DNA of 64,000 bases, from positions 186,001 to 250,000 of the forward strand of contig NW_026851682.1 in assembly GCF_026571515.1 (NCBI RefSeq), written 5' to 3'. This document shows positions 4,853 to 48,600 of the stretch, piece after piece. The position numbers and the translations under genes are program-made. A model generated the notes under the pieces. It searched no databases. It saw nothing but the letters and a program-made list of their open reading frames with translations, and was not told where the DNA came from. The stretch's first letter is position 1. Every line of letters starts with the position of its first letter. The stretch comes from Ruditapes philippinarum. Lineage: Eukaryota.

Positions 4853-7800
4853 TAACCGACATACAGTCATTATGTAAAAAGTGCGTATTACTGCAACAAT
4901 CAAGATATACATATATTTAGTTACCTCCAATTTTTGCACATTCTGCTAATGTGTTGGTGGCAAGTGACGAGTATGATAAAAGACCCGAGGGTGTATTTAA
5001 CTGGTACGTCGAAAACTGTTCTACAGTAACAGGACAAGATGGCTGTAAATCCGCAAGGCATTTGAACATAGTCCACAACGATACTTCCGGTCTGAAATGT
5101 ATTTGGTGATGTAAAGAATTCTTAAATGAAACGTTATGGATATGAGCCGCGTCATGACAAAGCCAACATAATGCCTTTGCGACCAGCATGGATCCAGACC
5201 AGCCTGAGCATCCGCGCAGTCTGATCAGGATCCATGCTGTTCGCTTACAAACCCTATAACAAGTAGAGAAACTGATAGCGAACAGCATGGATCCTGATCA
5301 GACTGCGCGGATGCGCAGGCTGGTCTGGATCCATGCTGGTCGCAAACGCATTATGTTGGTTTTGTCATGGCACGGCTAATATATATTTTTACTTTGGATA
5401 GTTAAGGTATGTCACTTTGATTCTAATAGTGGTGACAGCAGATAGTGTGTGTAAATTTAATATGAATGTAGGCAAAGCCTATGAACAGGGAGGTTAGATA
5501 AAAAAAATCGTTCATTTTTATTTTAAATTTTTCGTTTTAAATGTGTCATTCTGTATACCATGCACCGTATATCCTGCACCGCTTCTTTTTTCAATCGGAA
5601 CACCTCAACGAATATTCTTAAGCTGAAAAGTTGCGGTTGTTCCATTGTCGGAATAGCTCGCCGATTATCATTCAGTTACATTAAAAATGGCGGCGCTAAA
5701 CTAGAAATGACACTGAAAATTCCATTGATAAGTATAAAACTCATTTTTTAATTATTTTGTTTAATATTTGATTTCCTTTTAAATATACACACCCGCAGAA
5801 ATATTTGTAGAAATCATACACTGTCACCCCTTGGAAGCCGTATATACTTGACGGTACGCAGAGTGTGACACCCTGACAGACGGTGTCTGAAAAAAGAATA
5901 TATGACTTTGAAATTACACCTTTGATAATTCTATGCTACCTGTATAGTATTAGGCCAGCCACGGTGACCATCAAAGTAAAAGGCACATTCGTGCGGTATG
6001 GCTAGGCTTTAGAACTCTTAATTATTTCATAATTTTATGATGTTTGCCTTCTGGTGTTATAACTTTTCATTAATAAACATTCAAATTACTATTATATTTA
6101 CCTAGTGATAGTATAGTTCAGAAGAAAACTTATATAATAAAGAGAAAGAACGTCTTCAACAGAAAAAGTCGCCCCTGCGTTCCTCTTTTTGAGCTTGTTT
6201 TTTTTTCTTTTATTATAAGCATCTGTTTATTGCATGGCGGGAATGTTTTAAACATTTAGCCTCATGCTGTCGTAAAATATATATGTAGTAAAGAAACGAT
6301 TCGTAAAACGCTATCGCAAATTCCTTAATTTGAAAATTTTAACAAAATACTATTTCCAATATACCTGAAATATGCTATGCAACATAATTACAGGTATACA
6401 TGTACCAGTTCTTAAAGATCCTGTAACACATTTTTTTGTTTTAAATCATAAATATTGTGCTCAAATTAAGATTTATCAATATTGTAGTTTCCAAATTCAT
6501 TATTCCTAAAGATATTTCCGAATTTTACATTTCATGTAAATAAAGGGAGGTAATAAAAAAATATTTTCTATAAAATTCAAGTCAAATTTTACAAAAAGAA
6601 ATGAATACATCTATTTACATACATATAATACGGACAACTTGACTGGCTTTCGGTTTCATAAATAATTCCTTTATTCATATACTTTAAATACGATTTAATT
6701 TCACTTCTATAATAGCCTACTCTAATCTTGTTTTATTTTTGTTTAATGAGATTATATTTATGATTCAGGTGAAAATTAATGAAAACTAAGGTGTAAGGTA
6801 AAATATCCTTGTTCAANNNNNNNNNNNNNNNNNNNNNNNNNNNNNNNNNNNNNNNNNNNNNNNNNNNNNNNNNNNNNNNNNNNNNNNNNNNNNNNNNNNN
6901 NNNNNNNNNNNNNNNNNNNNNNNNNNNNNNNNNNNNNNNNNNNNNNNNNNNNNNNNNNNNNNNNNNNNNNNNNNNNNNNNNNNNNNNNNNNNNNNNNNNN
7001 NNNNNNNNNNNNNNNNNNNNNNNNNNNNNNNNNNNGCGAATCCTATGTTCATTTTGTATGGGTCGAATCGAGCTTTGAATTTTTCTAGAAACGTTGTTTG
7101 AACTGCATTTTCAGTAGGACAGTTATTCTGTGCTAAAATACACGAGTATACCAGTTTTCCTTGGTCACTGTAAACATAATATTAATGGCATAATAGCTAA
7201 AAATATCCTATGCTATAAACGTTATTTTTTTTAAAGTTTTAGATTTTTGCTTTATTTCACGATAGAAAAATCGTCATATTTTATTGCCAAAAAAGAAACA
7301 TATACATTTTGAACATGCATGTAACGACAGTTACAATACAATGATATAATATATTTGGCAAAAGGGTTGATCTTCGAGTGCTCTCAACATAAGCAACAGA
7401 TCTTCCTTTACGATGTGATTGTAAAGTTTTTTATACATTTGTATAATTTGTATATTTTTTTAGATTTCTGGCGGTCGCAAGTAAAAGTTGTACATCCTTA
7501 ATCATCAAACAAATCATTGCCAAATAATATTTGAGCCGCGCCATGACAAAACCAACATAATGGGTTTGCGACCAGCATGGATCCAGACCAGACTGATCAG
7601 GATTCATGCTGTTCGCTTACAAACCCTTTTACAAGTAGAGAAACTGATAGCGAACAGCATGGATCCTGATCAGACTGCACGGATGCGCAGTCTGGTCTGG
7701 ATTCTTGCTGGTCGCAAACCCATTATGTTGGTTTTGTCGTGACGTGGCTCATTTACAACATGGAAATAATCACCACAATAACAAAATGGTCAGCTTCAAC

Positions 7801-12863: not shown

Positions 12864-15800
12864 AGGTTTTGAATGTCAATAAACGTAAAATGATGTCTTA
12901 TTTTATGTTTTTTGAAAACTCATCGAAGAATGCTATACCAGATTTGATTTAAGTTTCAGGGGAACTTAAATTGATGAATTTATGTTTGAAATAAAATTAT
13001 GGGGCGTTACCCAATTTTAGCGCTTTTAGCGTTGAAATGGACTGTTTCATCATGAGAAAATTGCTATTGCCTCATAGGTTTATTCTAAAAGCAAACTGGG
13101 TTAAAATGAACACATTTTAAATAAATGTTTATGCGGAAAAAAGAAATTCACTTTTCGCCATTTGAAAAATAGATTTAATATATACTCAGTTGAAAAAGAA
13201 AGTGTGCACTTGGTTAATTCGAAATTCTGTATACAGACAAGAACGAAACAATTGGGTCGAGTGATGTTCCATCAAACCATTCAAGTTTTAAAAGGCAAAA
13301 GCGCATTTACAAAAACGTACACTTCTACTATTACTTTTCATCCCTCGGCTGCTTTTACGTAACCAAAGTTCTGATAATAATCAGATCTCAATTAAAAGTC
13401 AAACATCATATAATCAATATATATTTCTGCAAATGTTGATATATCAAATATGCCAAAAGTGTTCTTAAATAAGTAAAGAAAGCTTCTCTGTAACCATATG
13501 CACACTTTCTTTTGAAAGTCAGTATATGGCGTCACATGGAATCACACTTGTCTTTTCTGATTTTGCTATCGAAAGAGAAAAAGGAACCTGCACACTTTGT
13601 AACCAGCAAGAAATAGGCGATGAATTTCACTGTTTTTTTCAAATGTAGTTATTTTACTCATGAAAGTCACAAGCATATCAGTAATTACTATTCAAGGTTT
13701 CCTTGTATTTCAAATATTCAGGCGTTAATGTGTAGTGATAACAGAAATACTTTATTTAATCTAGCAATTCTTGTTAAAGAAATAATGCTTAAATTCCACT
13801 TTAGTCATCTTCCTTATTTACTTATTTACTTTTACGCCATGTTTAAAGGAGACTGCAATGATGTATTTCTTCTGCACAGAGAGCTGTAACAATGAGTTAA
13901 TGTACAGGATAATGAATTGTACATAATTAACTTATGAGAGTGGATATCTCCCGATCAGAAGTGTGAACGAGTCCCTTTAAATAGTTGAAACTGTAAATAA
14001 TTAATTAACTTTTTTTAACTTTTAAATATCACGGAAATATTTAAATTATTTTAGATATGTAATTGAAGGTCTGACCTGGAAAGAGAGAAATTGTCACAAA
14101 AGATATCATCAATGTCAAATCCATCATTCAAAAGGTCGTGTTTTTCTATTCTATGTAGTATGACCCATGACTATCGAGTACATCCGAAAACAAAACTTCT
14201 GTGTTTAAGTTGTTCCTTTTATCCCTTTGAAAACAACCCGATACTGGTGTTAACAATATAATGACATTCCATTATTTACAAATTTCAAACGACATCACAA
14301 AGTAAAAAGAGTCTTTTTTCTTCGGAGCGGGTACTAATTTATCCAACGTTTCAGAATGGGAAATGATTTACGTTTTGGAGCGGGTACATAATATTTAAGT
14401 TATTTCGGGTTTCTACTCATATATACATATCGCTTTACGCTCCACCGGCGGGAACTGTATATAACGTAAATTGGATAATAAATATTCAATAGAGTCATAA
14501 ATTATTCGCTGGAGCATGGGAAAATTAGATGTTACAGTCAGTTGCTGGGTATACCATCTCCTTTTCAATGATAAAAAACGATATTAAAAACGATACGCTT
14601 TTTAAAGATAAAAACCCCTACTTTACTGCTAAGCATTACAACATACTGCGTGATATTGACTGATGAGTATTATTCTTTTTATAAGGAAGGTGTTACTTAT
14701 ATATTCATTAAAAAATCCCCCGTCATTATTTACAGCTTAAACAGTTAACGTTTAAAATCCACTTACTGTGAAGATGATGGAATTATTATCTTTCGAAAGA
14801 CATTATTAAAAGTTTAAAAGGTCAAAACATATTATCGTAACGTGATTTTAATGAATTTTGTTAAATAAATATTTCCTCTATTTATTCCAATATATCAATT
14901 CTATATGATTATGAGATAAACAGACAACAGTTTACAAAAAGGAAGGAAANNNNNNNNNNNNNNNNNNNNNNNNNNNNNNNNNNNNNNNNNNNNNNNNNNN
15001 NNNNNNNNNNNNNNNNNNNNNNNNNNNNNNNNNNNNNNNNNNNNNNNNNNNNNNNNNNNNNNNNNNNNNNNNNNNNNNNNNNNNNNNNNNNNNNNNNNNN
15101 NNNNNNNNNNNNNNNNGTGAGCGATAAGAACGAAAAGAGCTAAACGAATGAAAAAAATATTGAAGTAGATTGAGATAACATAAAAAAAAGTCGCAAAACA
15201 GCCTTATTCATCTTTATCTCTTGATGTATAGATTATTACGAAAAATTCTAAATGGCATAATTATTTACATGTACATATATCAGACAAGATGAATTAAATC
15301 ACCTTCTTACGCTATCTTGTTCACTTGCCTATTAATTAAACAAGACTATTAATACGCGTATTAATGTAGTTCGTTGGCATTTAAGTAAACCAGAGAAAAA
15401 AGTTCCTAAGACATGTATAAAGAAGCAATTTCTTTGGAGAAAACGTTTTAATTTTCCAGAGATAATTTTTGAAATATAATTTTTAAAAACAAAAACATTA
15501 TTTTATTTTTGTAAACGCACAAATCTAAATATAAACTACAGCAGTTACTTCCTCTTACCTTAAAAAGGCGTGGTGACTTCACACAGACATATTTAGCCCT
15601 AAGGCAATGGTTCTATGAGTAAGAAGTGAAAATGTATCTATATAGTTTCTGAAATCGCCTTCCTGATTATGTTACGGAAACATTGTAAATGTCATATGAT
15701 TAAAGCTGCATGCCTATAGGTGAGCCAAAAATTTTTCAAGAAAATCCAAATTTGAAAAAAAAAATGTACAAATGCACTAAGATTTTAAGAAAAATAAAAA

Positions 15801-17421
15801 GATTTAATATTTAAGTTATATATAATTCATATGTCATATGTGATTTATCATTGATTTTGCAGTATTCACCACCATATTGCTACTACTGCGTGACTTTCGT
15901 GGTGAGGGTTTTTTCTAAATCATATCGTAATAAGAATAGCACAAAACTACGATTTTTAATTTATTTCTGAGTATATTTCTTAATTATCGAAACAATTGCA
16001 CATCTTTCTGTTTTCGTGCCTAAGCTGATCTATATATGAGATTCTAATTTTATATTTTAAGCTTTTGGACCTGAGTGGAGTCCCTTAAGCTCAAGAGTGT
16101 CTTGAAACCTATTGAACTAGCGAAAACCAAGAACATGTGTTTGAAAGATATATTGACTTCATTGCAGAATAGTTTAACACCACTTCGTTCGTTTAAAGTA
16201 AATTTGAAACCAGTTCAAACCACCGTCTTCAGGAGAAAACCAAAAATAACTAGACATAAGCTGAGTTTCTATAAGGATAGATAATTTAAACGACAGTCAA
16301 ACTGGTGAACAAAGGTCATCCAAAGGAAGGACCCAACATAACCGAAACATTATAAGTTAAAGACACTCCACTGATTTTTTTTAACATAAAGGGTTCGAGA
16401 TCTATGTTCCATTTGCTGTACGTCTTGACCAATAATGTTTGTACAAAATTTCAGATCATCTATTTTTCCAGAATAATTATTTTTATCATGAAAAATTATT
16501 GTTGCAACACTTTTCACTCAAATTAAGCTACGACTAGCACGTGCTACGATGTTCGCTATTCAATCACAACATGTGTTAAAGTTTCCCCTTAGAATGATGA
16601 ATGATTTGGTTTCACCTTGAATACGCTCCCTTCGCAGCCCAAGTTTTTTAAAAAAAGTGAGCGATGCACAGGAGAGTACGCATTGAATGAGACATAGACT
16701 GACGTTTTAAAGATCACGCAATTATATATATATAGATATATATTTTAATTTTAAGGTTGTGAATATAAATGGGTTTAACTTAACCGTGATCTGAATTTGA
16801 AAATAATTTGTAACAATTTTTTTTCTATCTTTCCTTTCTTCAAACTTCAAACTTTTATTTCCATCAAAGGTTTGCATCAAGTAAACAGCATTTTATCAGC
16901 ATTATTTAAAAAAAATTGCAGTGAATAATGGCGGCATATTTAGTAAACAAGTGACTGTATTCAAGTAAATGGAGAACGACGAACATATCCAAATAAAATT
17001 AAATAGAGGTCAAGTAAAAATACATTTATCTATCTGTAGAATAAATAAGAAGTACATAGTATCCAAAAATACTTCATACTATCTTTTGACAAAGGTGTCT
17101 CATGAAGTCACGTGGCCTAAACAATCAATATATTTCCCTTTTAAAATAACAACCTTTGTTAATAATTTCATGTAATTTTGCAAAACAATTAGAAGTTTAA
17201 TTTTTGTAATATCTTAATTCTGCAGTGCTTATTAATTTTACAAAAAAAAGATTGGTTGATATCATAAAGCTGTGTGAATTCAGTTAAAAAAAAATTAAGA
17301 AAAATAATTAATAGATAAATAAAAAAGATATTTTGTTGTTGGTTCAGATGATTGTTTGGTGTGAGTTTAGTCATATCGTAACGGTTACATCAAGTTTACT
17401 AGTGACAGCAGACATTATTAT

Positions 17422-17660
17422 TTGAGCCGCGTCACGACAAAACCAACGTAATGCGTTTGCGACCAGCATGGATCCAGATCAGTCTGCGCATCCTCGCAGT
17501 CTGATCAGGATCCATGTTGTTCGCTATCAGTTTCTCTACTTGTAATAGGGTTAGTTAGCGAACAGCATGGATCCTGATCAGACTGCGCGGATGCGCAGGC
17601 TGGTCTGGATCCATGCTGGTCGCAAACCCATTATGTTGGTTTTGTCGTGACGCGGCTCAT
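17422..17660. mobile_element. Palindromic MITE, same family
   Basis: Near-perfect inverted arms tgagccgcgtcacgacaaaacc...ggttttgtcgtgacgcggctca. Confidence 0.9.
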
Positions 17661-17765
17661 TTTAGGCACGTTAAACTCACACTTACTTCACGTCTTTATA
17701 CGAGTACTCATCGTTTGCAGTGAAATCAGAGTGATTTTAAAACATTCATTCGTTCGTTCGTTCGC

Positions 17766-17808
<43 letters not shown>

Positions 17809-18490
17809 TTCATTCACTCATTTACTTACTCACAACTATGACAACTGCTGGTGTAACTGTGAGATTATTAAATTAGGTTTTGATAACATTTACATGTATA
17901 TAGAGTAAATGCAGTTTGCTTTTTCTACCCATATTTATGTCATCTATTTTATCTAAATATGTCTGAATGGGTGTGTATTTATTTTCAAGGATGATTCAGA
18001 AGATAGGTTGCTGCGTTTTATTCATGAGAGAAAGTCGCATCAAGATTTTATGCTTTGATGTGTGAGATTATCAACTGAATATGAACAATTACCTTTTTTT
18101 ACAACCTATAAATTCACAATGAAAAAAAAAAAAGAAATTTTCCTTGACTTAATTTTTCCCATACGTTGAGGAATATTGAGTTAATGTTCAGAATTTGTGT
18201 CTAGACTAAAGAAAATGTAAACGAATTATTGGAGTAAGTTAGTTTAAACAGATCAACTGATGCTCGATTACGAAACAATTTGTTTCAACTTATGTCCACT
18301 TCCGCTTCTGTCATAAAAAGAAACACGCTCGTGATCCGAGCAAAGGTTTGAATCAACTATCCATTAATTGAGAGTCAGACACCTAAGCCACTAGATCGTT
18401 ATTAGCACATTCTAAATTACAATTCAATTCAATTCAATTAAAACGATGTTATTTGTCAGAAACAACTTTATTCAAATGATGACTTATTAT

Positions 18491-18721
18491 TTGAGCCGCG
18501 TCACGACAAAATCAACATAATGGGTTTGCGACCAGCATGGATCCAGACCAACCTGCGCAGTCTGATCAGGAACCATGCTGTTTGCTATCATTTTCTCTAC
18601 TTGTAATATAGTTTGGAAGCGGACAGCATGTATCCTGATCAGACTGCGCGGATGCACAGGCTGGTCTGGATACATGCTGGTCGCAAACCCATTATGTTGG
18701 TTTTGTCATGACGCGGCTCAT
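18491..18721. mobile_element. Palindromic MITE, same family
   Basis: Same termini and core as the other copies. Confidence 0.88.
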
Positions 18722-19956
18722 TTGATAACTAGAAACAATGGTTGCCACCCCTTAGACAACTTTAATTGAAAAAGTAAATATTGTATAGTGAATAGACTTT
18801 TTAAAGGCAGAGTATTTCATGAACACTAGTTATTTCTATATTCTTTAGAAAAAGCAAACACGGCTTAAAGAGCGTTTAAATATATACTATGCTCATCCTT
18901 GAGAAAAATATTTTTATCACAGAAATTTTCTGAAATATATTAAATTCGTTCTGCATGTGTCTAATATGAATTAAAAAATGGGTAGACTATGTACAGGAAA
19001 CTGCGTTCCCTATTACAGGTCAAAAAAAGTTGGTATTTTCTGGGAAAAAACCTGTTCTTCAGTTCTTTAGTTCTTTTTAATAACATTTATCATATTGTGA
19101 CCACCACATAGTGTGTAGAGATTTAAACATAAAATATATACTTTATGTAAAGTCAAAACATGTTTATTTTATATTTACAAAGAGACAATGTAGAAATTAT
19201 CAATATTTTCTAATTTCAAATTTGAGCATAGTATATCTTTAAGAACGTGTTTTTTTATCAACAAAAAGAAAGTAATGCTGAATGTAAAAATGTAATTGTC
19301 ATGAACGGAACAAAATGTAGAGTAAACAAAGTAGTATTTTGACTTACATACAAAATACTAAATAACTATAACCTCCCTCATTGTAAAAAAACAAAGTATG
19401 GTTCAGATTATTAGCCAATCAATAACGTTTTGGAAACTATAAAATGACACAAAGATTTTGAGGAATCAAATAAAAGCATTTCAGGAGAAGTACGTGGCTT
19501 TAAAATGAAGAGAGAAAAAATTTCTTTCACTTTTCTTTCTTTTATTTTTCGGCAGATTTTTTATTTTAAATATGGAAACGTTAGCATGGACTAAACATAT
19601 AGCTTACATAAATACAATAATTTCCATATTAACAACCAGGGGCAGTTGGTTTTTTAATTGCTACATTGCGAACAATCCCAGAGTCATCAATACACTTGAC
19701 TTTGATAAAAAAAGATTCTTAGTGTAGTTTGAACATATTGTTACTTCATCTATAAATCGTGAAAAGTCGTACATATCGTCATTTTCCGTAACTTATCTGT
19801 TTTTCAAAAGGATGTACATTAACACAACAGTTTGGAGTTTTTGCATATTTCAACGCATGAATACGGAACGGAAGCCGGTCGAAATATGCTGAAATCTTTT
19901 AGATAAGTTTTAAGATAAATGTATTTTCTTAATTTTCCAAAAAGATTGATTTGAAA

Positions 19957-22332
19957 TCACCTGTCATGCCTTCCGTTCCTAAACTGGTGTAAAACATTCA
20001 GATTTTGAAATAACTTTTCAATATCAATACGTGTTTCATTGGAACTACTTTCGTGAAAATGTGATTTTCCATTTAGGTTTCTTTTAATGCCAATATCTGG
20101 TATTTTGTTGCCTTTACCTTCATCATGGCCTTTGTGTTCTAATATGTGATGTTTATAGAAGTGTTCCGAATTCCATGATGGAAGATTCTCCGTCAGTTGT
20201 TTTTTCTTCGCAGTCCATGAATAAACAGAAGGGTACTTTTTCCTATTCTTTCCAAAATTATGCGTGTTGTCTATGAGTGTATCAGTGCTACTCCTGCTAG
20301 AGGGTATCAAAAATGAAGTGTCTTTATACTCATAACCATTCCATAACTGCCCTAAACTGTGATACGTTTGACTAGAATATAAAGTAGTCAAGCTATTCTT
20401 CTTTGAACCAATGCTTGGTTTCAAAACTGTTTCAATTGAACTTTTACTTGTTTTCTTTTTCTTTGTCAAACAAGATTTCAACTTCATTGATGTTACACCC
20501 GTAAAAACCGGCAAGAGTAAGACAGTTGTCAGCAAGGCTAAAACTAAAAGCGCCTCTTCGAAAAATGCAATAACTAGAGCTCCTGTCACTAAAGAAAACA
20601 GTGAGTAACCCCAAAGATGCCTGAAACCAGAGATAAATGGGTTTGAATTTCGAAACTCTTCTTCAACTGCCCTCTGTGGAACCCATTTAGCATTTAGAGA
20701 AACGTTTGCATGAAGCGCCCGTATAAGACGGATGCTACCAACCAACGCTTCCGGTGTGAATTGTAAAACGGAAGCTACTGATTCAATAATCACAGATTTA
20801 TAATTCTCACGATTACACACCGCAAATTTCGGAAATATCAAAATGCTAAACATGACGATGATTATAGATAAGTTAGGTTGTTTTAAATGAACACTCACGT
20901 TTATACAAATGTACAGTAATAACAAAGGCTTCATCAACATATGTCTCAATGCGGAGTGTGCTATATATGACGTCACAAAGTCTAATTTCGATTCAGTTCG
21001 GACTTTAGTCTTGTTGAATTTTGATTTCTGAAAATATTTTTGAAGCCATCTCATTGGCTTGCCAAAAGCGTTTTTCCAGAAATATGTGGCAAGGATAATT
21101 TCGCCTCTATTCCAGCGTCTTTCGCGTATACCCCATGTGACGTAATTGTGACTTGGTGCTTCCAAAAGGTACGTACTTCCGGCGTATAACGGCTTAAGGA
21201 GCGCAGCTTCGAAAGTATCATGACTAAGAACATCAACGGGTACTCTTTCGATTAAATTGTCTTCGCTTCCAATAACATGTTCGATGTACAATTTATTGTT
21301 TATCAAAGCTTTTCCAAAAAATCCAGACTGTCCGAAGAGAGCCGTCAGAGCATTAGTCAATGGTTCATAAATGGATTGCCTCATGGCCTCTAAATGCATA
21401 TATAGAGTATCATCTTTCGTGCATTTAAACTTAATTGACGGTTGTATTATTCCTTTGTCAGGATGTGCCGCAGCTATTTCAAGAAGCTTGAACACAACTC
21501 CCCTCAACACTCCTGTATCACCGTCCAGGACCAAAGTATAGTCAAACTTTCTGTTTCTAATATTCCTGACGTCATCACTATCGTGGAAGAGATTTTCACC
21601 AAAAGTCCTCGCTTGTTTTCCATAATAACTAATGTCACAGTAAGTAAATGCTTTGGAAATTCCTTCTGAAAGAAGCATTAGGTCCTGATATTGGCCGCAT
21701 TTCTTTAAAACACGACTCACTCGATGGACCACCATAAATTCTTGAGAGTACCTTTCACACAAACTTTCCAGATAACATTCTTCAAATTCATTCCCGTCAA
21801 TGTCGCAATATTCTTTCCAGACATTTTTGAAATGCATGTCGTCAATATCATCAAACCGTCTGTTGGAAAAGGCCAGTCCCTCTCTATATAACTCATCATG
21901 TATTATTTTACGGTATTTATCTCTTAGTTCTAGTTCATATTCCTTCAGTTCTTTGTCATTTGTAGCACTTACCAAAACAGCTGAAACCTTCGGACTCATA
22001 TTCCCTTTGTAAGCCATATACATTGTTTCTATGCACTCCTCGATATCATCTTTACTCGTCGCTAGCAAATTATAGTTCAAAATAAGCGAAAGATGGTCAC
22101 ATGATGCACGTTTATTTTCCCGCCTTTTTCCTCCCATTGCAAAGGTGGCCACTGTCTGAAGTGGAAATTCAAGAACAGAACCTTGAAGTATTCCAAGTAC
22201 AGCGACTATGACTGCCCCGAGCACCTTGTTAGTCTTTGTCCAGTCAATGTTAAAGCAGTTCAAAACTACGCAGAAGCTCGCCAGCAGGATCCAACCGGAA
22301 AAATATATCCGCACACGATTTGTAAGTTTCAT
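19957..22332 (-). CDS. Glucans biosynthesis glucosyltransferase H (OpgH/MdoH)-like processive GT-A glycosyltransferase, intronless, 791 aa
   Basis: Ordered motifs KKCG, YTLVLDGDT (DxD at 21517-21525), HPDKGIIQPS, DTLY, IYEPL, FGK, YIEH, RVP..VLSHDTFEAALL (21217-21225) and RERRWNRGE (21112-21120). These match recalled OpgH motifs RKSG, YMVVLDADS, NPNAGIIQSS, DTLY, VYGPL, FIEH, ILSHDFVEAALM and RDRRWCHGN. Two N-terminal and about four C-terminal hydrophobic segments. Confidence 0.88.
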   Translation of the reverse strand: MKLTNRVRIYFSGWILLASFCVVLNCFNIDWTKTNKVLGAVIVAVLGILQGSVLEFPLQTVATFAMGGKRRENKRASCDHLSLILNYNLLATSKDDIEECIETMYMAYKGNMSPKVSAVLVSATNDKELKEYELELRDKYRKIIHDELYREGLAFSNRRFDDIDDMHFKNVWKEYCDIDGNEFEECYLESLCERYSQEFMVVHRVSRVLKKCGQYQDLMLLSEGISKAFTYCDISYYGKQARTFGENLFHDSDDVRNIRNRKFDYTLVLDGDTGVLRGVVFKLLEIAAAHPDKGIIQPSIKFKCTKDDTLYMHLEAMRQSIYEPLTNALTALFGQSGFFGKALINNKLYIEHVIGSEDNLIERVPVDVLSHDTFEAALLKPLYAGSTYLLEAPSHNYVTWGIRERRWNRGEIILATYFWKNAFGKPMRWLQKYFQKSKFNKTKVRTESKLDFVTSYIAHSALRHMLMKPLLLLYICINVSVHLKQPNLSIIIVMFSILIFPKFAVCNRENYKSVIIESVASVLQFTPEALVGSIRLIRALHANVSLNAKWVPQRAVEEEFRNSNPFISGFRHLWGYSLFSLVTGALVIAFFEEALLVLALLTTVLLLPVFTGVTSMKLKSCLTKKKKTSKSSIETVLKPSIGSKKNSLTTLYSSQTYHSLGQLWNGYEYKDTSFLIPSSRSSTDTLIDNTHNFGKNRKKYPSVYSWTAKKKQLTENLPSWNSEHFYKHHILEHKGHDEGKGNKIPDIGIKRNLNGKSHFHESSSNETRIDIEKLFQNLNVLHQFRNGRHDR

Positions 22333-23762
22333 TGTAAAAGGCCGTCAGTATGATAATGTATCTCACGTGGATGGATCGATGTCATTTTAATTTCAGTTTT
22401 GACTTTCTTTTTCTAGTCCCGGTTTTAACAAGTTATATATTTTTAATTTTTATTTAATTGTCTCGTTATTAATTTAACAATGGGACTTCTTTATAACATA
22501 TTGTCAGTGTGACCATCTAGATCAACCTACTTCTTTTTTTTATATTCATATTTCAAAAGAGGACAGTTGTATTCTATTTTCATGTGATAATTAATAGAAT
22601 GATCATCGCACAAGAAAAGCGCGGACGTATTGAATTGCGTTATTAGGCAATGTGATAGTCTTAACCGATTTTTTTTTTTCAAAAAAAAAGAAAAAAAAAG
22701 AATAAAGAGTAGTCATACCTATCCAGTTTTTGACCTTATCTTTATTCAACGAAAACTTGATAATTTATGGCTAACATGCTGGAGAAAAAAAGGACTAGCA
22801 ACAAGTAGAACAGTACATTCATGGGTTATTAAAAAAGCACTTTAAGTCATATTTCAGTATGTGTGGAATTGAAAGTGTTTTACGGTTAAAATTAAAGCAT
22901 CACGCCTCCNNNNNNNNNNNNNNNNNNNNNNNNNNNNNNNNNNNNNNNNNNNNNNNNNNNNNNNNNNNNNNNNNNNNNNNNNNNNNNNNNNNNNNNNNNN
23001 NNNNNNNNNNNNNNNNNNNNNNNNNNNNNNNNNNNNNNNNNNNNNNNNNNNNNNNNNNNNNNNNNNNNNNNNNNNNNNNNNNNNNNNNNNNNNNNNNNNN
23101 NNNNNNNNNNNNNNNNNNNNNNNNNNNNNNNNNNNNNNNNNNNNNNNNNNNNNNNNNNNNNNNNNNNNNNNNNNNNNNNNNNNNNNNNNNNNNNNNNNNN
23201 NNNNNNNGATAAAATAGGTGACAATTTTTACAATTAAGTGCCTTTACCTAAGCTTAGAAATAACCAATAACTTTTAAAAATAAGCAGAAATTTCTCTTAT
23301 TCCAGTTGTAAGTTTGAATATAGAAATCAACTCAATTTATCAGGGAAAACGTAGAAGAAGGTTTTTTTTTCAAAGTTTGATTTTGAATAATTATTTATAT
23401 TATCTCATTTGAAGGCGAGTCCCCTTAAGAGTATCTTTATCGTGAGAACTTGAAGCTTTGAAAAGAAGAAATTTCTGAAAATATGATAGGCAATAAATTT
23501 GATAAAAAGGTATTTTAATTGAAAAAAAGTGTGTAAAATCTTCACGGTACTGAAATAGATCGTAACAAAATGAAAAAAGTGAAAAAAGTTAAATTGACTT
23601 ATTAATGGGTCAGAAGACCGCGAATTGATTGAAAGGTTGACATAATAAAAGAAGAGTTTCTTTATCTTGTTTTTATGTTGTTGTTGTTATTTTTTCTTTC
23701 TTGCTTTATAGTGGCGGCTAAGATTATTTATGTTTTGATCTAAATATTCGGACATTAATGTG

Positions 23763-42600: not shown

Positions 42601-45600
42601 TTTTTCATTTGAAACATGTTTAAATATTTGGCATATATGCTTTTTATCCAATTTTCTTTTTTTCCCACAAAAAATAAAAATTGATACATCTATATCCTGC
42701 ATATTAAGTAAAGGTATGCAACTCTCGGCTCATTTTTCAGCACACAAAGTCATCTTAATATGAACTCCGTAACTCCAACATTTTTTTACCAATTTTCAAA
42801 ATCTTTGTACCAAATGGTCGAGAATTGATAACTTTAAAAGGAAATAAAGCAGTTATTACAATCATTTCAAGTTATAAAAAGATATGTAATCTCCAATTCA
42901 CGCAAGTGTAGTAAGTTGACGGAGACTTGACCATGGTTTTTTGTCAAAATTACCTGACTAAACGGCAGTTTGTTCGAAATGAAGAATATTTTTTTGTATT
43001 GCACATTTAAAAATGATAGAATTTTATTATTATTTGTAATAACTGTTCAATCAAAATATATGAAACTATAACAAACCGTTTTTCTGATATGACAAATTGT
43101 CATGCAAGTAATGGTTCTGCAGAGTGCTCTCCCCTTTATTTTATTGTACAAAGTATTTTCATTGGTCTGTTTTCACACAACCAATGAAAATACTCCATAC
43201 AAATGCATCTGTTTATATTGAGAATTTGACAAATCTGAACAGTTACAAAACATTTTCTTTTTCAAAGTTTAATCCCCTCTTCCCCTGAAATGCATTGTGG
43301 TGATGTCTATTTCAGATGCATACATTTCTTTATATCTACAGCCCTGAAAATTGATGACATCGATCAATTGCTCTGTAAATATATATATCAAACTTGTAAT
43401 GAAGTTGTTTGCTTTCCTATGTTTATTAAGGTGACTGTCGGTTAATTTAATTGATGCAATAGATATGATTATAACTGGTATTGTTGTGACTTTATGTATC
43501 AACTAATAGCATGAATTTCAGTAAAAAACAGTAATTTTACTAGAGTGGAAAAGGATAACATGGGATATATAAAGACCACTTATGATGATAACTCACTGGC
43601 ATTGAATGTAAAATGAAACTACTTACATGCACTACCAGCTGATGTGGTTTTATATGTTGATTGAATTGAGTCACAAAAGTTTAAAATTTGATTTTGACAT
43701 TTTTACACCAAATTGATGATACTTGTAAGATATACTTCAATTTGGAATTGATAATGTAAAACTTAACATTTATTTAAACAAAAGCCCTAATTGCCTAAAG
43801 TGGACTAGATTTGGGAATTTTGTGTCATTTTGCAGAAAATAGGAATTTTTTCTGCCAATAGCAAAATTAATAGTCTACTTTGCTAGAAGCTTAAATAAAT
43901 TTAATATATTGTAATTGGTCTTTAGTGTAAAAAAAATGAGAGGGACTTAAAAAAAATAGGGGAAAACATTTGTTAATTGGGTAGGGCAATGTGCCAAAAT
44001 TAATTTAGGCTCCAAATTACCATGAAATTAGGGCTTTGTATACGTAATAAAAATATTAAAATTTCTTACATCACAACTTGTCTCTTTTCAGCCCATTCTC
44101 ATCGATGCCAGAGGGCATCTGATGGGAAGACTTGCAGCAATTGTGGCCAAGACTATACTGCAAGGTTTGTAAAATTCATTCATTGTTCTTGTACATAAAA
44201 TTTTGTCTTGATAAAATATTTTTTGAACACCATAATGTAATATTAACAAGTGTACTAATTTGTTTTACCGAAATACTTACGTGTAATAGCAATTTCGATT
44301 ATTTTATTTATTTTTGGTGATTAACTTATTGGAAACTAATTTGTATATTTAGGTCAGCGTGTTGTTATTGTACGATGTGAAGGTATCAACATTTCTGGAA
44401 ACTTCTACAGAAACAAATGTAAGTAATATCCAGTCAATAATTTCATTATTTTTATAGTCTTAAATTTCATTACTTTAGGAAAAAAAGTATGTCGATAAAT
44501 TTGAAAAAAAAAAGAAGAAACGATTTGATTCTATTTTGGGCAAAGTGGAATTTTTCTGACATTGGGACTTAGTAAATGCTTGCCTGTCTGAAGATTTTTG
44601 TCTTTGTACTTACACATTTATGTGGCAGATAAGCTTGAATTTATTTTGCTGTATAACTGTTGATATTCTTGAGTATTTGATACATGATTGTTTTATACCA
44701 CTTATGATGATAACTCACTGGAATTGATGCAGAAATGAAACTATTTACATGCACTACCAGCTGATGTGGTCTTCTTTTGTTTCCAAAATAAATGCAATTT
44801 GTATAGACACATTGCAAAATGCAACACTTGTTCTGTTTCAACTTCAATATTGTATATTATAATCTTACCACTTATGATGATAACTCACTGGAATTGATGC
44901 AGAAATGAAACTATTTACATGCACTACCAGCTGATGTGGTCTTCTTTTGTTTCCAAAATAAATGCAATTTGTATAGACACATTGCAAAATGCAACACTTG
45001 TTCTGTTTCAACTTCAATATTGTATATTACAACCTTACCACTTATGATGATTACTCACTGGAATTGATGCAGAAATGAAACTATTTACATGCACTACCAG
45101 CTGATGTGGTTTTCATTTCTTTCTTTACAAAATTAATGTAATTTGTATAGTCACATTACAAAATGCAACACTTGTTCTGTTTCAACTCCAATATTGTATA
45201 TTACAACCTTACCACTTATGATGATAACTCACTGGAATTGATGCAGAAATGAAACTATTTACATGCACTACCAGCTGATGTGGTCTTCTTTTGTTTCCAA
45301 AATAAATGTAATTTGTATAGACACATTGCAAAATGAAACACTTGTTCTGTTTCAACTTCAATATTGTATATTACAACCTTACCACTTATGATGATTACTC
45401 ACTGGAATTGATGCAGAAATGAAACTATTTACATGCACTACCAGCTGATGTGGTTTTCTTTGTTGTTCTTTTCTTTCCAAAATAAATGTAATTTATATAG
45501 TCACATTGCAAAATGCAACACTTTTTCTGTTTCAACTCCAATATTGTATATTACAACCTTACCACTTATGATGATAACTCACTGGAATTGATGCAGAAAT

Positions 45601-48600
45601 GAAACTATTTACATGCACTACCAGCTGATGTGGTTTTCTTTTTCTTTTATTGTTGCCAAAATGACAGTCAAATTTGCTTTGTTGAATTATGATACTTGAC
45701 ACTTGAACTGTTCGAATTTCAATAAAAATATATACTGTACTTATTCAAGTCAATATTGTATGTATAATATTTTGACCATGTATGATGATAAATCACTGGA
45801 ATTGATGCAGAAATGAAACTATTTACATGCACTACCAGCTGATGTGGTCATTTTTCATGTTACAAGAATTCCCCCAATATTAAACCTTTTGAAAGTTGTT
45901 GGATAAAAACTGCACAGGATGATAACTCACTGGTATTGAAAGCAAAATGAAATTAATCACATGCACTACCAGCTGATGTGGTTTTACTGTATAAAGTGTG
46001 CGGGAATATTCTTGTTTTGAAGTAATTGTCATTAATGTTGAAACACTTGTCATTAATGTTGTCATAATTGTTGAAATAATTGTCATAAATATTCAGATGA
46101 TTGATAAATATTCTTACATGTGTTTCAGTGAAGTACTTGAAGTATCTGAAATACAGATGTAATGTGAACCCGTCACGAGGACCCTTCCATTACCGTGCTC
46201 CTTCAAGAATCTTCTTCAAGGCCGTAAAGGGTAAGTTTACTCTCTAGTATATCATAGCACACAAATCTTTTGATAATGCTGGAATTGAAATGAATTGCTC
46301 CTTTTAATGTAGGATTATGCAAGCATTTTTCAAACGATTTTGCAATGCCTTGTTTAGTACCTCTAGATTTGATGTGAAAATATTTCATCTAAAGGTTAGT
46401 TTTAAATATATTGAAGGTCGATTGCAAGACAAGTTCTTGGGACTTGTATAATAATATATTTTACAGTCTGCTTCCTGGACCTAACCAGTATTGGTGTCAT
46501 CTGAGGAAACAGGGTCATGACCTATGTAGGGCACGAACCCATGATCCTTGGGTTGAGAGACAACCTAATCACTAGGCCACTGCACCTCCTCAATCAACTG
46601 TAGAAATGATACTGACTTGACACTTTGTTCTATCTGGTTATTAGTTTAGTACAAAAATTCTCAGTGCTTCTTTTTGTCATATCATGATCTTCTTTGTGTT
46701 TTATAGGAATGATCCCACACACCACAACTCGTGGTAAGGAAGCCCTTGGCCGTTTGAAGGTATTTGAGGGTGTCCCACCCCCATACGACAAACAGAAGAG
46801 GAAAGTAGTACCAGCAGCTCTCCGTATTCTCAGACTGAAACAAAACAGAAGGGTATGACTTGTTAAATCTGTTCAGTTATAGCTATTACAATGTATAGTA
46901 CTGTAAGTGTTTCAAACTTTGTACAAATGCTTAACTTTGATGACTTTATTAAATTTTTTGGCATAGTTTACTGCAGTAGGTGTAAAGTTTTTGAAAATAG
47001 CTCTTAATTAAAATTGTGGATCCATATTCTTTAGAATTTACGTAATATCTAGTACTTCCTGTGGATGCCCAATCTTTCATTGCTGAGTTTTGTAGAATCC
47101 TCCCTTTCATAATCGCTCTAAACCACAAAATGATAAATACTTGCTCCTCACCGCTGTGGGTTTGAATCCCGACAGGGACTTGGGATTCTTTCTTGTGAGG
47201 AAGGTATCAAGCTAGCTCGCAGAATGTTGGTGGCTCTACTCAGGTGCCCGTTTGTGCCTGAATTAATGCATGGAATTTCACCTGAGGTCTTCCTCCACAA
47301 GTAAAGCTGGAAAGTTGCCTATGACGTATTCTGTGTTTGTGCAACATAAACCCAAACTCTTACTTGAAATATAAAACTGAATCTTTGTGTCTCCTACAGT
47401 ACTGTGATTTGAACAGACTTGCCCATGAAGTTGGATGGAAATACCAAGGTGTTATTGGTACACTTGAGGCCAAGAGAAAAGTCAAGTCAAAGAAATTCTA
47501 CGAAAATAAAAAAGTTGCTGATGTAAGTATGGTAGTAAGGCTGGACAGGTTATACACTATGTAGACCATTTGTGATGATCATTTCCCGAACTTGATCTTA
47601 ACTGAAAAATAAAAATATTGATCTGAAGTGGTTTACATTTTACTTTGAAGTTATTTTACCTAGGAGAAAAAATCTAGTTCTATTCAATGTAGCTGTAAAA
47701 GTGAGCTTAGCTAGACAGTGTATTGATATATATATATAACATGCATGGATGGAGAGTTATCTTGGTTACCCAGGTGTCTGTTTAAACTCTTTGTACTACA
47801 TCAGTCAGGAGATATTCAAGCTTTAGTCTAGATTGCTATTATACAGGCAACTTGTGTAAATCATGCAAGTTTGCTATTTTTTACATGAAAGGGGATGTAC
47901 AGTATACATGATTACTTAATCGGTCTGTAAAGTATATACCTACAAGTTAATGGTGCTACCAAAAAAAACCCAAACTGTTTTTGTCAAACTTTCCAAATAT
48001 TTCAATAATTTGAATTTTCTATAATTTGAGTTCAAAATCCTGTAGGTCTTAAAATTGGTTTAGTCTGTCACTGCTAATGATGTTTATGTAATATTTGCTA
48101 CTCTTGATGTGAAATGATGTCAACATTACGCTGAAGCAGTAACAAACCATTTATATATTTCAAATTAGGTTATGTTAGGTTCCTTGTTGAAGAGGGAGGA
48201 GCTTCGGATTAGAAAAGCATCGACAAAGTGTATTTTGTCAGCGATAAAAGTTTGGTTGAAGGAAATAATCAATAAAATACATTTTCAGTTTCTATTTTTG
48301 CCAATGTTAATTATCACAATTAGGGATATCATGTTATCGGGTCAAAAATAAAGAGCCTAGTTAAACTGCACTTGTAGGAAAGGTTTGTCACTCCATTGCC
48401 ACAATTTAAATTTTAAAGAGGATGAATTTCGTTAAATTGTGGTAAAAACATGTCAAAATTGATCATCCTTTAAAAGCTTGGTTGTCTTTTGAGAATGTTT
48501 ATTTTTGGTTTATCCAAAATTTGATCAATTGGGGTGGGCTCTAGAAACAAATTGTATTATGTTAAGAAACCGTCTACATAAACCATTGGTGATGTTAATT

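What the first reader, a model, noticed from the sequence alone, without database searches (positions are those of the whole stretch)
19957..22332. Intronless bacterial-type beta-1,2-glucan synthase (OpgH/Cgs-like) in an animal genome
Seen: an intact 791-codon ORF with no introns, among intron-rich genes, carrying DGD, GIIQP, LSHD and RERRW motifs and flanking hydrophobic segments. It shares a gap-free stretch (15117-22909) with two MITEs of the family found in the TSR gene introns, and it is AT-rich like the host exons; both argue against contamination. Known: LSHDxxE and RxxRWxxG, in place of TED and QxxRW, mark bacterial OpgH (GT2, osmoregulated periplasmic glucan backbone) and the GT84 domain of cyclic beta-1,2-glucan synthase. 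This protein mixes features of both (DTLY, IYEPL and EAAL as in OpgH; GK, RVP and RWxRG[DE] as in Cgs). It lacks chitin synthase EDR/QRRRW. I know of no established beta-1,2-glucan synthesis in animals. Inference: a domesticated horizontally acquired gene that may give the animal an undescribed glucan (mucus, shell matrix, osmotic or immune role). Caveat: the first conserved Asp (OpgH LSDS) reads VSAT here.
Basis: partly seen in the sequence, partly recalled or inferred. Interest (0 to 1): 0.92.

Follow-up and report, generated by a model that had tools for sequence, protein, structure and literature searches.

The report
Conserved OpgH/Cgs-like glycosyltransferase gene in a clam
The intact intronless gene is real and belongs to the clam, but it is not a private bacterial import: it is one paralogue of an old, uncharacterised enzyme family shared by molluscs, acorn worms, a ribbon worm, dinoflagellates, giant viruses and a few bacteria, distantly related to the bacterial enzymes that make beta-1,2-glucan.

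Summary
Observation confirmed. It sits in gap-free sequence with two copies of a host MITE family.

Interpretation partly supported. The protein is a membrane GT2. [quoted passage not shown] It is a member of neither.

It belongs to a small separate family of 182 clusters among 1.84 billion representatives. Named members are molluscs, hemichordates, one nemertean and dinoflagellates. Other members lie on giant-virus contigs or inside giant multidomain proteins of a few Elusimicrobiota and Omnitrophota.

The whole family has replaced the first UDP-binding Asp by Ala (S-A-T). An ancient bacterial origin remains possible.

The window gene is a fast-evolving paralogue. A second copy in the same genome is 94% identical to the Mercenaria orthologue. 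The window copy keeps 86 of 86 highly conserved columns, so it is under constraint.

The product (beta-1,2-glucan?) is inferred, not shown. RefSeq already names some orthologues "glucans biosynthesis glucosyltransferase H-like", and I found no paper on them. No RNA evidence could be obtained.

The parts
19957..22332 (-). Complete intronless CDS, 791 codons plus stop
   Evidence: The N-terminus lines up with residue 1-6 of mollusc and hemichordate homologues.
22156..22317 (-). Two N-terminal transmembrane helices (aa 6-59)
   Evidence: Hydrophobic segments 6-29 and 35-59. Model helices 3-28 and 36-66 with pLDDT about 90. They align to the Cgs TM region.
21148..22095 (-). GT-A catalytic domain (aa 80-395)
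   Evidence: Model strands and helices 83-391. Profile match to Cgs GT84, to OpgH, and by fold.
21961..21969 (-). S122-A123-T124, at the position of the first UDP-binding Asp of Cgs (D527) and OpgH (LSDS); Asp replaced by Ala
   Evidence: S122 and T124 are invariant in the 30-sequence family alignment. The role of D527 is from PMC10901819.
21682..21702 (-). KCGQYQD motif, aligned with OpgH RKSGNIDD and Cgs RKRGKL
   Evidence: K211, C212, G213, Y215 and D217 are invariant.
21517..21525 (-). DGD (D270, D272), the DxD motif equivalent to Cgs D624/D626
21208..21228 (-). LSHDTFE; D372 is equivalent to the catalytic base D739 of Cgs (TED of BcsA)
21103..21126 (-). RERRWNRG; R406-W407 is equivalent to Cgs R773-W774 (QxxRW of BcsA)
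20467..21144 (-). Interface helices and four C-terminal transmembrane helices (aa 397-622)
   Evidence: Aligns to Cgs up to about residue 990.
19960..20460 (-). Disordered Ser/Lys/Asn-rich C-terminal tail (aa 625-791), poorly conserved across the family
   Evidence: pLDDT under 50; composition. A 176-aa fragment from another source is 91% identical to it (P0143).
19540..19575 (-). AATAAA-type hexamers about 390 nt downstream of the stop; possible poly(A) signals, weak evidence in AT-rich DNA
   Evidence: Read directly.
18485..18739 (.). Host MITE copy (palindromic, ~240 bp) 1.2 kb downstream of the gene, in the same gap-free stretch
17416..17662 (.). Second host MITE copy; the family has at least 3694 candidate copies in the genome
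22910..23207 (.). Assembly gap 578 bp upstream of the ATG, so the promoter region is only partly readable

Best explanation
This is a functional, host-encoded paralogue of an old eukaryote and giant-virus family of membrane-embedded inverting family-2 glycosyltransferases. The family is a third branch beside bacterial OpgH and the GT84 domain of Cgs.

Architecture (shown): two transmembrane helices, a cytosol-type GT-A domain, four more transmembrane helices, then a disordered tail. This is the same 2+4 TM plus GT core as Cgs.

Catalytic equipment (shown): the DxD motif (D270/D272), the base (D372 in SHD), the RxxRW acceptor motif (R406/W407) and the K-x-G-[NQK] motif are all kept.

Mechanism (inferred): it takes a nucleotide sugar, most likely UDP-glucose, at the cytosolic face and builds a beta-linked glucan or oligoglucan. 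The linkage is most likely beta-1,2, as made by its only characterised relatives.

Main reservation: the family-wide loss of the first UDP-binding Asp (S-A-T in place of S-D-x), together with family-specific invariant Y87/N88, implies a remodelled nucleotide pocket. Donor and linkage are therefore uncertain.

Evolution: the gene has been inherited vertically within molluscs. The window copy arose by duplication within heterodont (imparidentian) bivalves and evolves several times faster than its sister copy, while keeping every highly conserved residue.
For: Host gene:
- Contiguous with host MITEs.
- AT-rich like the host (GC 38%), against 60-64% in the bacterial relatives.
- Orthologues sit on chromosome-scale scaffolds of many molluscs.

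Family:
- 163 word-index hits and 182 clusters among 1.84e9 representatives.
- Named members: bivalves, gastropods, cephalopods, hemichordates, the nemertean Tubulanus, and the dinoflagellates Biecheleria and Noctiluca.
- Giant-virus contigs carry it next to topoisomerase II, HSP70 and NAD-ligase genes.
- Bacterial members include one on a 2.53-Mb contig.

Relationship to OpgH and Cgs:
- NCBIfam MdoH models only, E 6.5e-10.
- Family profile against PDB hits only Cgs, E 2.7e-13.
- Family HMM scores OpgH at 52 bits, Cgs at 44-57 bits, BcsA no hit.
- Foldseek best match is Cgs, E 7.5e-17.
- VIA-align: Cgs Z 23.5, 514 aa, 3.5 A; BcsA Z 18.
- 24 of 30 ESM Atlas feature hits fall in the Pfam-family set typified by bacterial OpgH-named clusters, at 0.93.

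Catalytic residues are mapped through PMC10901819.

Vertical descent: trees.

Constraint: 86 of 86 columns conserved at 90% or more, and 143 of 145 at 80% or more, are kept, while 39% of variable columns differ from Mercenaria.

Paralogy: the copy on C7305/C63 is 94% identical to Mercenaria P0005, while the window copy is 67% identical.
Against:
- No biochemical data for any family member that I could find.
- The first UDP-binding Asp is missing.
- The genome shows no OpgG, GH144-type or GH94 partner enzymes, so the bacterial pathway context is absent.
- Sequence identity to OpgH and Cgs is only 25-29%, over the second half of the GT domain only.
- No beta-1,2-glucan is known from animals (my knowledge).
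Confidence: 0.6

Rival explanations
1. Same family and fold, but a different reaction. The remodelled nucleotide pocket (Asp to Ala, invariant NYN and S-x-T) means another donor sugar or nucleotide, another linkage, or a non-processive transfer to a lipid or protein acceptor. The product would then not be a beta-1,2-glucan.
For: - Family-wide loss of the Asp that binds UDP in Cgs (D527) and BcsA (D179).
- No OpgG, GH144 or GH94 genes in the genome.
- Similarity to OpgH and Cgs covers only about 170 residues at 25-29% identity.
- GT2 specificity is notoriously hard to read from sequence (my knowledge).
Against: - The acceptor-side and base motifs (SHD..E, RxxRW, GK) are those of the two beta-1,2-glucan synthases, not of cellulose, chitin or hyaluronan synthases.
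- Cgs is the best fold match across the whole ordered protein.
Confidence: 0.33
2. Recent horizontal acquisition from a bacterium by this animal or its close ancestors, since domesticated.
For: - Intronless in all four copies of this genome.
- The only characterised relatives are bacterial.
Against: - Orthologues occur throughout Mollusca, with a tree that tracks species relationships.
- The closest bacterial sequences are 26-28% identical.
- Composition is host-like.
- Ordinary OpgH is not reached by a full phmmer scan at E 1e-3.
Confidence: 0.03
3. Decaying or non-functional duplicate. The window copy is the fast-evolving paralogue and may be on its way to pseudogenisation, with the Mercenaria-like copy doing the work.
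For: - Terminal branch 0.37 against 0.06-0.09 for the Mercenaria, Mya and Dreissena orthologues.
- The genome holds one clearly dead copy on C12760.
- No expression data.
Against: - Intact 791-codon frame (P about 1e-27 by chance).
- All 86 highly conserved columns are kept.
- An 83%-identical full-length orthologue exists in another source (P0001).
- It is the Mercenaria-like copy on C7305 that carries two frame breaks in this assembly.
Confidence: 0.04

Closest known systems
[quoted passage not shown]
   Same: - Best fold match: Z 23.5, 514 residues, 3.5 A, covering model residues 1 to about 630.
- The only PDB sequence match of the family profile.
- Same 2+4 TM arrangement.
- DxD, SHD base, RW, GK and RWxRG[DE] motifs are shared.
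   Different: - No N-terminal domain, no cyclase (GH189) and no GH94 phosphorylase domain. The protein has 791 aa against about 2800-2900.
- The first UDP-binding Asp (D527) is Ala.
- The primer tyrosine Y694 falls in a Cgs-specific insertion with no aligned counterpart.
- Eukaryotic and viral, not bacterial.
OpgH/MdoH, osmoregulated periplasmic glucan glucosyltransferase (E. coli b1049)
   Same: - 29% identity over 170 aa, with VLDxD, GIIQ, DTLY, LSHDxxEAAL and RRW shared.
- The only NCBIfam hits.
- RefSeq uses this name for some orthologues.
   Different: - 38 bits against a curated cut-off of 419.
- LSDS is replaced by VSAT.
- GK where OpgH has GH.
- No OpgG partner in the genome.
- Six rather than the eight TM segments described for OpgH (the OpgH figure is my knowledge).
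Fungal OpgH homologues of Verticillium, Fusarium oxysporum and Metarhizium (Klosterman et al. 2011, PMC3145793)
   Same: An OpgH-related glucosyltransferase in a eukaryote, attributed to transfer from bacteria, with a knockout phenotype.
   Different: - That paper describes them as 'closely related to bacterial enzymes' and as clustering with Rhizobiales.
- The family here is far from any OpgH and much older.
- That paper reported no other eukaryotic homologues.
Giant-virus and animal processive GT2 synthases (chlorovirus and vertebrate hyaluronan synthase, chitin synthase, BcsA)
   Same: - Membrane GT2 fold with a cytosolic GT-A domain (Z 14-18).
- Shared between giant viruses and animals.
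   Different: - TED/EDR and QxxRW motifs there, SHD and RxxRW here.
- The family HMM does not detect BcsA.

Membership tests
OpgH/MdoH (NCBIfam equivalogs NF003955-NF003963) | Score above the curated whole-protein cut-off | tested here: not met
   Best 37.8 bits against a cut-off of 419; only aa 261-410 match.
OpgH/MdoH | Catalytic motifs DxD, LSHDxxE and RxxRW | tested here: met
OpgH/MdoH | First nucleotide-binding Asp (LSDS in E. coli) | tested here: not met
   VSAT; Ala at the Asp position in 24 of 30 family members, never Asp.
OpgH/MdoH | Works with periplasmic OpgG/OpgD (MdoG, PF04349) | tested here: not met
   No match in the 1.41-Gb genome; the E. coli control was positive.
OpgH/MdoH | Makes a beta-1,2-glucan backbone from UDP-glucose | not testable with these tools
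   Needs enzyme assay and linkage analysis.
[quoted passage not shown] | GT84 fold docked under six TM helices | tested here: met
   Z 23.5, 514 aa aligned, rmsd 3.5 A; six hydrophobic segments, 2+4.
Cgs GT84 | D624/D626, catalytic base D739 and R773 of the RW motif | tested here: met
   D270/D272, D372 and R406.
Cgs GT84 | UDP-coordinating D527 | tested here: not met
   Aligned to A123.
Cgs GT84 | Fused cyclase and GH94 phosphorylase domains | tested here: not met
   No Pfam domain in the ORF. Real Cgs from Elusimicrobiota shows GH94 and Glycoamylase domains. No GH94 anywhere in the genome.
Cgs GT84 | Autoglycosylated primer tyrosine (Y694) | tested here: inconclusive
   Y694 lies in an insertion relative to the family profile.
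Eukaryote and giant-virus 'S-A-T' OpgH/Cgs-like family (RefSeq 'glucans biosynthesis glucosyltransferase H-like'; ESM Atlas cluster 'Glycosyltransferase 2-like domain-containing') | Full-length homology and all family-invariant residues | tested here: met
   55-83% identity over 75-100% of the length to mollusc members. 38 invariant columns. 86 of 86 conserved columns kept.
Eukaryote and giant-virus 'S-A-T' family | Placement inside the mollusc clade of the family tree | tested here: met
   With P0001 (100) inside the imparidentian bivalves (96-99).
Cellulose / chitin / hyaluronan synthases | TED or EDR base motif and QxxRW | tested here: not met
   SHD and RERRW. The family HMM does not hit E. 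coli BcsA. Lower fold scores, Z 14-18.
Recently transferred bacterial gene | Nearest relatives bacterial; foreign composition; absent from sister taxa | tested here: not met

The most novel reading that the evidence does not exclude
Molluscs, hemichordates and nemerteans make a so far undescribed beta-1,2-linked (or related) glucan or oligoglucan. They would do so with an ancient enzyme that they share with dinoflagellates and giant viruses, whose deepest relatives are bacterial. The family may have moved between eukaryotes through giant viruses. In some protists it is fused to an ABCC-type exporter that carries the product out of the cell, as Cgt/ChvA does for Cgs.
Probability: 0.3. Interest if true: 0.8.

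Novelty: new variant of a known kind. Interest (0 to 1): 0.55.

Why it matters
Beta-1,2-glucans are regarded as bacterial products used for osmoprotection, symbiosis and virulence. No animal synthase or animal beta-1,2-glucan is established, as far as I know.

This gene points to a strongly conserved family: about 50% identity between clam and acorn worm. Its catalytic centre matches only the two bacterial beta-1,2-glucan synthases. That makes the question of what this enzyme makes in animals, dinoflagellates and giant viruses directly testable by expression and linkage analysis.

The family also gives a natural experiment on the GT2 nucleotide pocket, because the first Asp is replaced in every member. 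Its scattered distribution is worth a proper study of gene flow between bacteria, giant viruses, protists and animals.

For this particular window the result is more modest. It is one more paralogue of a family that databases already list, and not a lineage-specific acquisition.

Tried and rejected
- Pfam on the ORF: no domain.
- Single-sequence PDB search: nothing.
I therefore have no DNA of orthologues, no dN/dS, no intron check and no synteny in other species.
- Bacterial and archaeal genome scan with the giant-virus protein P0154: none.
- First tree with the mixture model on 94 rows did not finish. It was replaced by LG+G4 on 94 rows and the mixture model on 48 rows.
- OpgH model NF003958 in 151 Elusimicrobiota: none at E 1e-20.
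- The ABC part of the fusion proteins is ABCC/MRP-like, not specifically the glucan exporter NdvA/ChvA type. The fusion supports export of a cytosolic product only by analogy.
- BFVD fold search: only distant GT2s at 8-12% identity.
- Partner enzymes OpgG, GH144-type and GH94: none in the genome.
- Literature: no paper in the library on the animal genes. The HGT compendium PMC13342648 has no supplements held.
- Contamination: rejected.
- Non-monophyly of animals: the free tree nests a dinoflagellate-containing clade between hemichordates and molluscs. The AU test does not reject a single animal clade (p 0.30), so I make no claim on direction.
Full report
**1. The observation**

It is far longer than any other ORF of the window; the next is 341 aa. 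With the window's composition (A+T 67%) a stop is expected at 7.5% of random codons. An open frame of 791 codons therefore has a chance of about 1e-27.

All quoted motifs are present: NYN 86-88, VSAT 121-124, KCGQYQD 211-217, DGD 270-272, GIIQP 294-298, FFGK 338-341, LSHDTFE 369-375 and RERRWNRG 403-410. Six hydrophobic segments flank the catalytic part: 6-29, 35-59, 465-483, 485-508, 572-591 and 596-618.

N runs at 14950-15116 and 22910-23207 bound a gap-free stretch. That stretch also holds two ~240-bp palindromic MITE copies, at 17416-17662 and 18485-18739. These have relatives at 2711-2913, 5140-5383 and 7525-7770. The MITE family has at least 3694 first-look candidates in the 1.41-Gb assembly.

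The ORF has GC 38% and GC3 37%. A metazoan-type BACK + BTBD17-TRAF ORF lies at 52694-53719. Contamination can be dismissed.

**2. What the protein is**

Sequence searches:
- Pfam finds nothing.
- NCBIfam finds only the MdoH/OpgH equivalog models. The best is E 6.5e-10 at 37.8 bits against a curated cut-off of 419, and it covers only residues 261-410.
- The same profile scores E. coli OpgH at 52 bits and four Cgs proteins at 44-57 bits. These Cgs are bona fide, with GH94 and Glycoamylase domains. It does not detect E. coli BcsA.

Structure:
- An AlphaFold2 model built on A1 is confident for residues 1-624 (block means 81-98). Residues 625-791 are disordered.
- Foldseek ranks Cgs first (E 7.5e-17), then BcsA and the hyaluronan synthases.
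- VIA-align gives Cgs Z 23.5 (514 residues, 3.5 A, model 1 to about 630 on chain 401 to about 990) against Z 18 for BcsA.

The ordered protein therefore equals the TM1-6 plus GT84 core of Cgs, without its N-terminal, cyclase and phosphorylase domains.

**3. Catalytic residues**

Sedzicki et al. 2024 (PMC10901819) assign the residues in Cgs:
- D527 and D624 bind UDP.
- D739 is the base.
- R773 belongs to the RW motif.
- The BcsA equivalents are D179, D246, D343 and R382.

Counting along the alignment, which uses native numbering for 8rf0, the window equivalents are:

| Cgs residue | Window residue |
|---|---|
| D624/D626 | D270/D272 |
| D739 | D372 |
| R773-W774 | R406-W407 |

All of these are invariant in the family. 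The K-x-G-[NQK] motif also lines up: KCGQYQD here, RKSGNIDD in OpgH and RKRGKL in Cgs.

The exception is D527. It aligns with A123, inside the family-invariant S122-x-T124. OpgH has LSDS and Cgs has L[LS][ST]D. Every member of the present family (animal, protist, viral and bacterial) has S-[AVTS]-[TS] instead. It also has an invariant Y87-N88 where OpgH and Cgs have nothing similar.

It is not an accident of this gene but a defining trait of the family. The nucleotide pocket is remodelled, and the donor cannot be taken for granted.

**4. The family and its distribution**

The word-index search found 163 relatives. The exhaustive phmmer scan of 1.84 billion cluster representatives found only 182 at E 1e-3 or better. 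This is a small family, and ordinary bacterial OpgH is not reached.

Named members:
- Bivalves: Mercenaria, Mactra, Mya, Dreissena, Sinanodonta, Potamilus, Pinctada, Saccostrea, Mizuhopecten, Argopecten, Ylistrum.
- Gastropods: Haliotis, Patella, Lottia, Littorina, Batillaria, Babylonia, Nucella.
- Cephalopods: Argonauta, Octopus.
- Hemichordates: Saccoglossus, Ptychodera, Glandiceps.
- A nemertean: Tubulanus.
- Dinoflagellates: Biecheleria, Noctiluca.

A second search seeded with the Tubulanus protein added no further named animal phylum.

Two of the more distant full-length members (30-34% identity) lie on giant-virus contigs of IMG/VR. Their neighbours are a fused topoisomerase II, HSP70 and NAD-dependent DNA ligase.

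Among 185,579 prokaryotic species genomes, a motif scan found two relatives, an Elusimicrobia MAG and an Omnitrophota MAG (26-28% identity). Profile searches of 151 genomes of each phylum found strong full-length matches in 2 and 1 genomes respectively. One of them is on a 2.53-Mb contig. In these bacteria (GC 60-64%) the domain is buried in proteins of 1300 to 3390 residues. In one case it sits beside a second GT2 domain and LysM.

Some unnamed eukaryote-like sequences carry one to three copies of the domain fused to ABCC/MRP-type ABC transporter halves.

RefSeq and UniProt already label several mollusc members 'glucans biosynthesis glucosyltransferase H(-like)'. The ESM Atlas holds the cluster as 'Glycosyltransferase 2-like domain-containing', mostly Mollusca, with bacterial OpgH clusters as next neighbours.

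**5. Phylogeny**

I built two trees rooted on OpgH and Cgs: LG+G4 on 94 rows and LG+C20+F+G4 on 48 rows. Both give the same picture.

- Clade A holds the Noctiluca-type proteins and the bacterial giants.
- Clade B holds the giant viruses with an unnamed group, then Tubulanus, two unnamed sequences and the hemichordates.
- After the hemichordates comes a node (96-98) uniting the molluscs with a well-supported clade (100) that contains Biecheleria, many unnamed marine sequences and the ABC fusions.

Inside the molluscs the gastropod subtree reproduces the species tree: (Haliotis), (Patella, Lottia), (Batillaria, (Littorina, (Babylonia, Nucella))). The window gene sits with P0001 (100) inside the imparidentian bivalves (96-99).

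That is vertical inheritance since at least the mollusc ancestor.

The AU test does not reject a single clade of all named animal sequences (p 0.30). I therefore do not claim transfer between animals and dinoflagellates.

An ancient bacterial origin of the whole family is plausible, because both outgroups are bacterial and an Omnitrophota protein with S-A-S lies among them. It is not demonstrated.

**6. This copy**

The genome holds other copies:
- C7305 carries a copy with two frame breaks in the assembly.
- C63 carries the first 216 codons at a contig end.
- C12760 carries a decayed pseudogene.
- All are collinear with the protein, that is, without introns.

The C7305 and C63 copies are 94% identical to Mercenaria LOC123547353. 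The window protein is only 67% identical to it and 83% to P0001. The genome is therefore that of a clam close to Mercenaria (inference), and the window gene is the divergent paralogue. Its branch is four to five times longer than those of the Mercenaria, Mya and Dreissena orthologues.

It nevertheless keeps 86 of 86 columns that are at least 90% conserved in clade B, and 143 of 145 at 80% or more. Conservation was computed without the window protein and P0001. Meanwhile 39% of the variable columns differ from Mercenaria. That is strong purifying selection on the core.

**7. Mechanism**

Shown:
- A GT2 fold with a complete base, DxD and acceptor-motif set of the OpgH/Cgs type.
- A Cgs-like 2+4 TM core.
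- Constraint on the conserved core.

Inferred:
- Processive transfer of glucose from UDP-glucose at the cytosolic face, giving a beta-1,2-linked chain.

Whether the chain is threaded through the membrane (as proposed for OpgH) or released inside and exported (as for Cgs with Cgt/ChvA) is unknown. The ABC fusions in protist-like relatives favour the second only by analogy.

Against a simple copy of the bacterial pathway, the genome has no OpgG, GH144-type or GH94 genes, and the first Asp is missing.

My confidence figures:
- About 0.9 that this is a functional host member of this family.
- About 0.4 that the product is a beta-1,2-glucan.

**8. Literature**

I found no paper in the held library on the animal genes. 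The nearest precedent is the OpgH homologue of Verticillium, Fusarium and Metarhizium. It is attributed to transfer from Rhizobiales-like bacteria, and its knockout reduces virulence (PMC3145793). That paper describes those genes as 'closely related to bacterial enzymes'. The family described here is not.

**9. Limits**

- As a result there is no transcript evidence, no read-level check of the assembly, and no dN/dS, intron or synteny comparison with other species.
- Taxon labels are missing for most metagenomic and Logan sequences.
- The deep branches of the tree join long and compositionally odd sequences and should be read with care.

Noticed in passing
G000:C7305:60376-62422 (L002) and G000:C63:12947-13594 (L004): A second copy of the gene is 94% identical in protein to Mercenaria mercenaria LOC123547353. 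On C7305 it has two frame breaks, near codons 40-50 and 364-365. The C63 piece, at a contig end, reads through the first of them, so these may be assembly errors or haplotigs rather than a dead gene.
   Followed up: partly
G000:C12760:293235-294808 (L005): An old decayed pseudogene of the same family: 39-45% identity and many stops.
   Followed up: partly
P0121, P0122, P0123, P0124, P0083 (unnamed Logan/JGI proteins): One to three copies of this glycosyltransferase domain are fused into ABCC/MRP-type ABC transporters, giving proteins of 1149-3301 aa. This looks like a synthase-exporter fusion in protist-like organisms that cluster with the dinoflagellate Biecheleria.
   Followed up: partly
L008, L009, L012 (IMG/VR giant-virus contigs): Giant-virus (GVMAG) genomes encode 600-650-aa members of the family, next to topoisomerase II, HSP70 and NAD-dependent ligase genes. 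One contig also carries another GT2 gene 6.5 kb away.
   Followed up: partly
L033 (G126:C1, 2.53-Mb Elusimicrobiota contig), L037 (G001), L017 (G002): The bacterial members are giant proteins (1832 aa, at least 1304 aa, and a 3390-aa open frame). The family domain is preceded by long unassigned regions; in one case it sits beside a second GT2 domain and a LysM domain. In G001 the next gene is a 2115-aa protein ending in GGDEF.
   Followed up: partly
One search list (Dreissena DPMN_165331/165333/165335; Sinanodonta ACJMK2_005017/18/20/22): Freshwater bivalves (Dreissena, Sinanodonta, Potamilus) show the most copies, with near-consecutive locus tags that suggest tandem arrays. This could hint at a link with low osmolarity, as for bacterial OPGs. 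It has not been tested, and the list is truncated.
   Followed up: no
window 44697-50368: Two other notes of the scan describe snoRNA arrays in RPL13A introns here. Rfam at gathering score finds no family anywhere in the window. A PF00572 (Ribosomal_L13) search of the genome gave its only match on another contig. Short exons and divergent snoRNAs could be missed, so this neither confirms nor refutes them.
   Followed up: partly
window 52694-53719 (-): A 341-aa ORF with BACK and BTBD17-type TRAF domains: a metazoan-type gene, apparently in one exon.
   Followed up: partly
window 17416-17662, 18485-18739, 2711-2913, 5140-5383, 7525-7770: A very abundant ~245-bp MITE that is nearly its own reverse complement (88-90% when matched to itself in reverse). 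Many copies are 95-97% identical, which suggests recent activity.
   Followed up: partly
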